Below are positions 11,801-14,800 of a stretch of 64,000 bases of DNA, one piece after another. Source of the stretch: Bugula neritina (lineage: Eukaryota > Animalia > Bryozoa). How positions within the stretch are numbered: position 1 is the stretch's first letter; every line of letters starts with the position of its first letter. The notes beneath the pieces are model-generated. The model had not been told where the DNA came from, searched no databases, and was given only the letters and a program-made list of their open reading frames with translations. Where the stretch lies: NCBI GenBank assembly GCA_964035545.1, contig OZ037767.1, forward strand, positions 17,729,781 to 17,793,780. Direction: 5' to 3'. Position numbers and translations under genes: made by a program.

Positions 11801-14800
11801 CACTACAGAGTATACACTACACAGTACACACTATACAGTACACACTACAGAGTACAGTATATTAACTAAGCTAAGCTATGAAAGCTCACCGACTGTTCAT
11901 ATTGAAGGCTCTAATAACCACCCGACCTTCCACAGACTCACTGAGGCTAGAGTATACTTCCGACATCGTCACACTGGTTATTCTCTTCAACTCTCGTGAG
12001 GTGTGACGATAGTAACCCTACGTGTCAGATGTGAACAGGCGATAGTAACCCTACGCGTCAGATGTGAACAGGCGATAGTAACCCTACGTGTCAGAATGTT
12101 TGCTATATATTATTTATCTATACTTACCTGTATGTAATAGTATTCTATACTTACCTGTATGTTGTAGTATTCTATACTTACCTGTATGTCATAGTATTCT
12201 ATACTTACCTGTATGTAATAGTATTCTATACTTACCTGTATGTTGTAGTATTCTATACTTACCTGTATGTAATAGTATTCTATACTTACCTGTATGTAGT
12301 AGTATTCTATACTTACCTGTATGCAATAGTATTCTATACTTACCTGTATGTTGTAGTATTCTATACTTACCTGTATGTAATAGTATTCTATACTTACCTG
12401 TATGTAGTAGTATTCTATACTTACCTGTATGCAATAGTATTCTATACTTACCTGTATGTAGTAGTATACCAGTGTGATGGGGAAGACAACTGCTGCAAAC
12501 CATGGCAGACCATATATGGTAATCACTAGTGTGCCAATTATAGAGAATATCTGCAGAGAACAATAGTAATATATTACCTGAGATAGTAATATATTACCTG
12601 AGATAGTAATATATTACCTGAGATAGTAATATATTACCTGAGATAGTAATATATTACCTGAGATAGTAATATATTACCTGAGATAGTAATATACTACCTG
12701 AGATAGTAATGTATTACCTGAGATAGTAATATATTACCTGAGATAGTAATATATTACCTGAGATAGTAATATACTACCTGGGATAGTAATATACTAGCTG
12801 AGATAGTAATATATTAGCTGAGATAGTAATATATTACCTGAGATAGTAATATATTACCTGAGATAGTAATATATTACCTGAGATAGTAATACATTAGCTG
12901 AGATAGTAATATATTACCTGAGATAGTAATATACTACTTGGGATAGTAATATATTACCTGAGATAGTAATATATTACCTGGGATAGTAATATACTACCTG
13001 AGATAGTAATATACTACCTGAGATAGTAATATATTACCTGAGATGTAATATATTACCTGAGATAGTAATATATTACCTGAGATAGTAATATATTACCTGA
13101 GATAGTAATATATTACCTGAGATAGTAATATATTACCTGAGATAGTAATATATTACCTGAGATAGTAATATATTACCTGAGATAGTAATATATTACCTGA
13201 GATAGTAATATATTACCTGAGATAGTAATATATTAGCTATGAAGGGAAGTGAGTCATCCACTGTATAAACATCTGAAGAGAATCTGTTGATGATTCTCCC
13301 GGTAGCCGTCGTATCAAAGAAGGAGACTGGAGCCAGAGTAACCACACCGAGCAGCTTGTCATGGAGACGGGCGGCAGCACACAGCCCGCCGTATGCAAAC
13401 ACAAACGCTCTGAACAGAGTAAAGACGGTGTTGCCTACCGCCAGACCGCCATAAACCTCAAGGTAGAATGTCACATTGCTAGACACATTACTGGAGAGGT
13501 CAGTGCTGGAGTCGGGAGCATTTGATATCCAATAGGAGAGCCACCAGTCCGTCACGTTCTTTGAGCCCTAGCAACAGAAACACTGATGTCTAGAGCAGAG
13601 AGACACTGATGTCTAGAGTAGAGACACTGATGTCTAGAGTAGAGAGACACTGATGTCTAGAGCAGAGAGACACTGATGTCTAGAGTAGAGACACTGATGT
13701 CTAGAGTAGAGAGACACTGATGTCTAGAGTAGAGACACTGATGTCTAGAGTAGAGACACTGATGTCTAGAGTAGAGACACTGATGTCTAGAGTAGAGAGA
13801 CACTGATGTCTAAGCACCTGCATGAGAAGCAGAGAGAGGAGTATGACGAAAGAGAGGGCGGTACCAACAGCTGCCAGGTACATCCTGTATATGTGCAGCT
13901 TCACAGTGCCGCTGTCTTTCTCCTCCTCCACAATAGCTCCGCCCCCTTCTTCATTGTCCATAGCTTCCGCCTGCTGCCCTTTAGAGTCCTGCACTGTGTG
14001 CGGGTCTTCAGAGGGTACCTTGCTTGTGCTGCCTTCTGTCACTAGATGTCATTATATATCATATCGTATGTCATTATATATCATATTGTATGTCATTATA
14101 TATCATATCATATGTCATTATCTATCATATCGTATGTCATTATATATCATATTGTATGTCATTATCTATCATATCGTATCACAGTTGGAAAAGACATACC
14201 AGAAGATGCTGAAGGTGATGAGGTGTGAATAGAACTTGTGTATACAGGTAAGACATCTGAAGGAGGACCTAAAATATCCATCATATTACTAGCATATATC
14301 ATATTACTAGCATATATCATATTACTAGCATATATCATATTACTAGCATATATTATATTACTAGCATATATTGTATATTACTAGCATATATTATATTACT
14401 AGCATACATCATATCACTAGCATATATTATATTACTAGCATATATCATATTACTAGCATATATTATATTACTAGCATATATCATATTACTAGCATATATC
14501 ATATTACTAGCATATATTATATTACTAGCATATATCATATTACTAGCATATATCATATCACTGAGCATTTAGCTTAGTTGTATTACTAACATATATTACA
14601 ATACTGAGCATTCAGTATAGTTATATTACTAGCATATATTACTAGCATATATTACAATGTAACAAACCACAGGCCACTATGTTTCCATCCTCCATCACTA
14701 TCACCGTATCAGCTTCATACAGATAGGATATGTGATGAGTACAGAGAATACGTAACTTATCCCTCATCCCACTCAGTATACACTCATAGAATATGTGTCT

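What the first reader, a model, noticed from the sequence alone, without database searches (positions are those of the whole stretch)
12551..13236. An intron almost entirely made of copies of the last 20 nt of its upstream exon: possible intron birth by tandem duplication
Seen (minus strand): the exon ends ..ATAG CTAATATATTACTATCTCAG. The 666-nt intron is about 32 copies of GTAATATATTACTATCTCAG plus a 27-nt tail (GTAATATATTACTATTGTTCTCTGCAG). The unit differs from the exon end only by the C>G change that forms the GT donor, and three copies (near 12797, 12817, 12897) still carry the exonic C. Each unit runs GT...CAG, so the array is a chain of AG|GT sites. Established: tandem duplication across a proto-splice site is a proposed but rarely observed route of intron gain. 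Inference: either a new intron or an old intron overwritten by exon-derived sequence; the AG|GT chain could also allow recursive splicing.
Basis: partly seen in the sequence, partly recalled or inferred. Interest (0 to 1): 0.85.

Follow-up and report, generated by a model that had tools for sequence, protein, structure and literature searches.

The report
Old intron overwritten by exon-end repeats
An intron of a transporter gene (ABCC10) in what is probably a bryozoan looks newly born from repeats of its own exon end, but relatives have an ordinary intron at the same spot, so it is an old intron filled in by a known kind of splice-site-spanning minisatellite.

Summary
RNA contigs of a close relative (three studies) splice it out whole. 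Birth by this duplication is refuted. Three more distant species, in one clade with the window (100/100) and with saturated synonymous sites, carry a phase-0 intron at the same position made of ordinary, non-repetitive sequence. The position is absent in brachiopod, nemertean, coral and placozoan, so the intron was gained once, long ago, and later overwritten. Best model: slippage between two near-identical 7-mers 20 nt apart duplicated 15 exon bases plus the donor's first five; the array expanded and replaced all but the acceptor. The next, ancestral intron gained a like array recently (12 exon-end copies here, none in the relative). 21 of 24 ABCC10 introns hold minisatellites; triple-donor repeats occur 427 times in the genome against 10 for the control. 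This is the 'mirage' kind known from amphioxus. The scan noted like arrays elsewhere in this genome. Recursive splicing is untested.

The parts
8818..20589 (-). ABCC10 (MRP7) gene, 25 exons, 1517 aa
13217..13567 (-). Exon 16 (TMD2); ends at Gln, phase 0
   Evidence: covered by RNA contigs
13217..13236 (-). Last 20 nt of exon 16, the coding member of the array; begins with C, so it offers no donor
12551..13216 (-). Intron 16, 666 nt, GT-AG, phase 0; position shared with more distant clade members
12578..13216 (-). Array of 32 units (donor first 5 nt + exon last 15 nt)
12878..12897 (-). Unit 17, starts with C (no donor)
12778..12817 (-). Units 21 and 22, start with C (no donor)
12551..12577 (-). 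27-nt tail: partial unit (15 nt) plus 12 nt with the used acceptor; last 10 nt identical in the close relative; probable remnant of the old intron
   Evidence: remnant status is inference
12452..12550 (-). Exon 17, joined to exon 16 in RNA contigs
   Evidence: loose ends
12117..12467 (-). Comparison case: 13 x 27-nt donor-spanning array in intron 17, an ancestral intron; absent in the close relative

Best explanation
Intron 16 is an old intron, gained once in the stem of a clade that is probably bryozoan, whose interior has been replaced in the window's lineage by a minisatellite that spans the 5' splice site. Shown: old position, present array, clean splicing. Inferred: the exon holds a 7-mer at -22..-16 that matches the junction 7-mer (-2..+5) at 6 of 7 bases, exactly 20 nt apart; slippage or unequal exchange between them duplicated the last 15 exon bases plus the first 5 intron bases; the unit then expanded and homogenised, and the short original interior was lost except for the acceptor end. 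Only the first donor keeps the reading frame. Use of any later donor gives a stop within 7-10 codons, so such products would be null and probably decayed. The array is most likely neutral filler, with selection only on the exon copy keeping C, the first unit keeping GT, and the terminal acceptor.
For: Same phase-0 intron with non-repetitive 326-646 nt sequence in L041/L042, L045, L046/L047; best match of the exon end inside those introns has 8-10 mismatches of 20. These group with the window at 100/100, one change of the label, and four-fold sites are only 24-32% identical, whereas the array matches today's exon end at 19/20, where the relatives' exon ends differ by 4-7. The next intron, shared with Lingula and Tubulanus, has 12 exon-end copies in the window and 0 in L001, so old introns do acquire such arrays. 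21 of 24 ABCC10 introns are over 30% tandem repeat; 4 have arrays across a splice site, 2 of them at ancestral positions. Genome-wide 427 overlapping triple-donor matches against 10 for the reversed control. Microhomology. RNA junction. Stops on internal donor use. Internal donors decay freely (3 C starts here; A and GC starts in L001).
Against: Only about 12 nt of the intron are not unit-derived, so the old interior must have been deleted; no intermediate was seen. The tail also resembles a modified unit. The seeding step is inferred from sequence only.
Confidence: 0.92

Rival explanations
1. Loss and rebirth: the old intron was lost together with its upstream neighbour, then a new intron arose at the same site by tandem duplication of the exon end with a C>G change.
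For: The window's lineage did lose the intron 117 nt upstream (residue 1044), which L010, L041, L045, L046, Lingula and Tubulanus keep; adjacent introns can be lost together (general knowledge). Nearly all of the intron is unit-derived.
Against: Needs regain at the very same base. Intermediates would be null: one extra unit shifts the frame, two or more put a stop about 7 codons on (same for C-type units by inspection), until both a donor and enough length exist. The neighbouring ancestral intron shows the simpler route at work.
Confidence: 0.04
2. Recent de novo birth of the intron by tandem duplication across a proto-splice site.
For: No intron at this position in Lingula, Tubulanus, Desmophyllum, Trichoplax or the mollusc-like L059.
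Against: Three more distant clade members have the intron without repeats. The exon copy has C, and orthologues have Ala or Leu there, not Gly, so no AG|GT site lay inside the duplicated exon piece.
Confidence: 0.01
3. The old intron was overwritten, but the AG|GT chain is functional: it is removed stepwise (recursive splicing) or tunes ABCC10 output through unproductive donor use.
For: 28 AG|GT junctions; internal acceptors have as many pyrimidines at -14..-4 (8 of 11) as the used one, in a gene with weak tracts. The array persists in a relative with 18% four-fold divergence.
Against: The intron is short; each step of 20 nt is below any intron length seen here (shortest 109 nt in this gene); unit number and donor integrity differ between relatives (32 vs 21 units); RNA contigs show one junction only, though contigs drop rare forms. 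This rival can hold alongside the best explanation.
Confidence: 0.07

Closest known systems
'Mirage' minisatellites of amphioxus (Adh3; globins BflGb6, BflGb9), as described in PMC3087553, which cites Canestro et al. 2002 (PMC117041, not held)
   Same: Tandem units that span an exon-intron boundary, 10-72 bp in Adh3, many but not all with AG/GT signals, no interference with regular splicing, copy number differs between haplotypes, concerted evolution.
   Different: Here the array has replaced about 98% of the intron, each unit carries both an AG and a GT so the array is an AG|GT chain, and the host is probably a bryozoan in which most introns are minisatellite-filled.
Intron gain by tandem duplication across a proto-splice site (Rogers model; Drosophila cases in PMC2891723)
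   Same: Intron sequence resembles the flanking exon; AG|GT junctions.
   Different: The intron position is older than the duplication; the exonic copy has no AG|GT; the intron's 5' end is not a copy of the downstream exon's start.
Recursive splicing at ratchet points (own knowledge; mostly long introns, cf. PMC2773006 abstract)
   Same: Juxtaposed acceptor and donor inside an intron.
   Different: Intron of 666 nt, sites every 20 nt, not conserved in number or integrity, no evidence of use.

Membership tests
Mirage minisatellite | Tandem unit spans an exon-intron boundary | tested here: met
   Unit = 5 intron nt + 15 exon nt, 32 copies
Mirage minisatellite | Many but not all units keep splice signals | tested here: met
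   29 of 32 start with GT, 31 of 32 end in AG
Mirage minisatellite | Regular mRNA still made from the authentic site | tested here: met
   RNA contigs of three studies join 13217 to the exon-17 start; these come from a relative about 93% alike
Mirage minisatellite | Length instability and concerted evolution | tested here: met
   32 units here, 21 in L001/L002; lineage-specific variants spread over several units. Within-species or somatic variation not tested.
Intron gain by tandem duplication | Position absent in closer and more distant relatives | tested here: not met
   Present in L041/L042, L045, L046/L047; absent only outside that clade
Intron gain by tandem duplication | Duplicated exon piece contains an AG|GT proto-splice site | tested here: not met
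   Exon copy reads AG|CT; codon is Ala in window, L001, L041, L045, L046
Intron gain by tandem duplication | Intron sequence derived from flanking exon | tested here: met
   All but about 12 nt; explained equally by overwriting
Recursive splicing | Intermediates or lariats at internal AG|GT sites | not testable with these tools
Recursive splicing | Conserved ratchet site in a long intron | tested here: not met
   666 nt; other species have no array

The most novel reading that the evidence does not exclude
The 20-nt AG|GT chain is actually used by the spliceosome as a ladder of zero-length exons or of unproductive donors, and donor-spanning arrays, which are about 40-fold enriched over control in this genome, form a lineage-wide layer of splicing control or arise by a splicing-linked duplication process.
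Probability: 0.08. Interest if true: 0.6.

Novelty: new member of a known kind. Interest (0 to 1): 0.24.

Why it matters
As intron birth it would have been a rare caught-in-the-act case of the Rogers model; it is not. What remains is a clear cautionary example: an intron almost wholly made of exon-end copies, and absent from four other phyla, can still be old, so similarity to the flanking exon plus absence in distant orthologues does not prove birth by duplication. It also shows that a coding exon end can be a member of an unstable minisatellite, and that this genome, rich in such arrays, is a handy natural system for asking how the first of many identical donors is chosen.

Tried and rejected
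Assembly artefact: rejected (independent assembly of a relative, DNA depth). Coding use of the array: rejected (stop within 7-10 codons; RNA ends at 13217). C copies as retained ancestral state: not supported (none in L001; one G>C change spread by duplication suffices). Paralogy of the outgroup loci: unlikely (one ABCC10 in G000, next match 43%; clade 100/100). Full-length homologue search returned no named bryozoan in the top 120. Multi-exon alignments A1 and A2 were not used for searching. PMC117041 and PMC1783408 are not held. No paper on bryozoan intronic minisatellites was found.

Full report
Observation. On the minus strand the exon 13567-13217 is followed by a GT-AG intron 13216-12551 of 666 nt, made of 31 units of 20 nt, one of 19 nt and a 27-nt tail. 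TRF gives period 20, 33.7 copies, 96% matches. The unit consensus equals the last 20 exon bases except for C>G at position 1; 21 units are identical to it; units 17, 21 and 22 begin with C. A single 19/20 match would arise by chance about 2e-7 times.

Gene and organism. The exon matches ABCC10/MRP7 proteins. The genome has 216 Mb and one ABCC10. The closest outside DNA, L001/L002 (99% aa, 82% four-fold identity), comes from JGI records whose prefix I recall as the Bugula neritina mitochondrial accession; with the genome size and the 'symbiont metagenome' runs this points to Bugula neritina or a sibling. That name rests on memory and inference, not on a tool result.

Splicing. RNA-type contigs from three studies, about 93% alike and so from the L001-type relative, cover exon 16 to exactly 13217 and continue with the first 30 bases of exon 17; none enters the array. 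They also skip intron 15 at the modelled sites. The whole array is removed at the first donor and last acceptor. Keeping one unit gives a stop 10 codons on, two or more give a stop 7 codons on. Contigs drop rare forms, so minor use of internal sites is not excluded.

Age of the intron. Lingula, Tubulanus, Desmophyllum and Trichoplax read through this site without an intron, as do most metagenome hits, including the mollusc-like L059. That alone would have favoured birth. But a metagenome scan gave three further species, L041/L042, L045 and L046/L047, with a phase-0 GT-AG intron at the same base, 326-646 nt long. These introns hold no copy of the exon end: the best 20-mer has 8-10 mismatches. 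In a tree of 45 proteins they form one clade with the window and L001 (100/100). Four-fold sites between them and the window are 24-32% identical, that is saturated, and their exon ends differ from the window's at 4-7 of 20 bases, while the array matches the window's present exon end at 19 of 20. The intron is therefore far older than the array. It was gained once in the stem of this clade, at a CAG|GT or CAG|AT site, by a route these data cannot show.

How the array arose. The 7-mer at exon -22..-16 and the 7-mer across the junction agree at 6 of 7 bases and lie 20 nt apart. Slippage between them duplicates the last 15 exon bases plus the first five intron bases, which is the unit seen, with no C>G mutation needed. 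Expansion then supplied length, and the old interior was lost except for the acceptor end, whose last 10 nt are the same in L001. This step is inference. It has a direct parallel next door: intron 17, shared with Lingula and Tubulanus, has 12 copies of its exon end in the window and none in L001. L001 has the intron-16 array as 21 more varied units; its exon end has A at position 17 and so do its first two units, whereas window exon and units have T, which suggests exchange between the coding copy and the array. It has no C-start units but two A starts and one GC start, so internal donors decay freely and the C copies need not be exon relics.

Context. 21 of 24 ABCC10 introns are over 30% tandem repeat and 46% of the window is. 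Four ABCC10 introns have arrays across a splice site, two of them at ancestral positions. A pattern of three perfect donors 8-38 nt apart matches 427 times (overlapping) in the genome against 10 for the reversed control. The relatives L041, L042, Lingula and Tubulanus have 0% tandem cover in their loci, L045 and L046 12-22%. Earlier notes of this scan report like arrays elsewhere in this genome; I did not check those loci.

Comparison with what is known. Tandem repeats that span an exon-intron boundary, keep splice signals in many units, vary in length and leave normal splicing intact are described in amphioxus as 'mirages' (PMC3087553), where they were also proposed as a source of new introns. 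This array meets the four features I could test. It fails two defining features of intron gain by tandem duplication (PMC2891723): the position is not new, and the duplicated exon piece has no AG|GT. Recursive splicing could not be tested; the short intron and the unconserved sites speak against it, although internal acceptors are no poorer in pyrimidines than the used one.

Method notes. Searches were run exon by exon, by reference; a search with the joined spliced model was left out. The joined model was built only inside scripts for intron mapping and the tree.

Verdict. Real feature, old intron overwritten by a donor-spanning minisatellite (0.92); loss and rebirth at the same site 0.04; recent birth 0.01; functional use of the chain, compatible with overwriting, about 0.07. 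New member of a known kind, an extreme one. Interest 0.24.

Noticed in passing
window 13334-13333 (minus), ABCC10 residue 1044: The window's lineage and L001 lack an intron that L010, L041, L042, L045, L046, Lingula and Tubulanus all have: a precise intron loss 117 nt upstream of the array intron.
   Followed up: partly
window 13817-13568 (minus): Intron 15 is phase 0 in the window, L001, L042 and L010 but phase 1, one base further on, in Lingula, Tubulanus and Trichoplax: possible 1-nt intron sliding in this clade.
   Followed up: partly
window 18295-18098 (minus): ABCC10 intron 3, absent in Lingula and Tubulanus, is filled by about seven acceptor-spanning 28-nt units with AG|GT, and the next exon starts with GT: the classic duplication layout. 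Not checked in closer relatives; a better birth candidate than intron 16.
   Followed up: no
window 12117-12467, 12007-12095 and 9780-10121 (minus): Donor-spanning and acceptor-spanning arrays in ancestral ABCC10 introns 17 and 22.
   Followed up: partly
window 35517-35680, 55881-55980, 57366-57632, 31897-31925 (plus): Further donor-spanning arrays in two other genes (a glycoside-hydrolase-like gene and a DUF885-like gene, names by eye); the one at 57366 is also an AG|GT chain.
   Followed up: partly
L001 3710-3851: The last ABCC10 intron of the relative holds a copy of its exon end that the window's intron lacks.
   Followed up: partly
window 23342-28801 and 28867-29955 (plus): GC-rich Ty3/Gypsy-like element with an unbroken 1819-aa ORF, followed by a 362-aa ORF with a zinc-finger-like stretch; free of tandem repeats, so probably recent. 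Observed only.
   Followed up: no
window 44721-45404 (minus): 227-aa ORF resembling a GIY-YIG (Penelope-like) endonuclease fragment inside an intron of a novel-type protein kinase C gene; it adjoins a donor-side array.
   Followed up: no
window 52122-55799 and 49120-50882: Very long intronic arrays (about 3.7 kb of a 13-nt unit; 1.8 kb of a 22-nt unit).
   Followed up: no
whole window: 46% of the window is tandem repeat; almost every intron and some 3' UTRs carry their own, unrelated minisatellite. No paper on this in bryozoans was found in the held library.
   Followed up: partly
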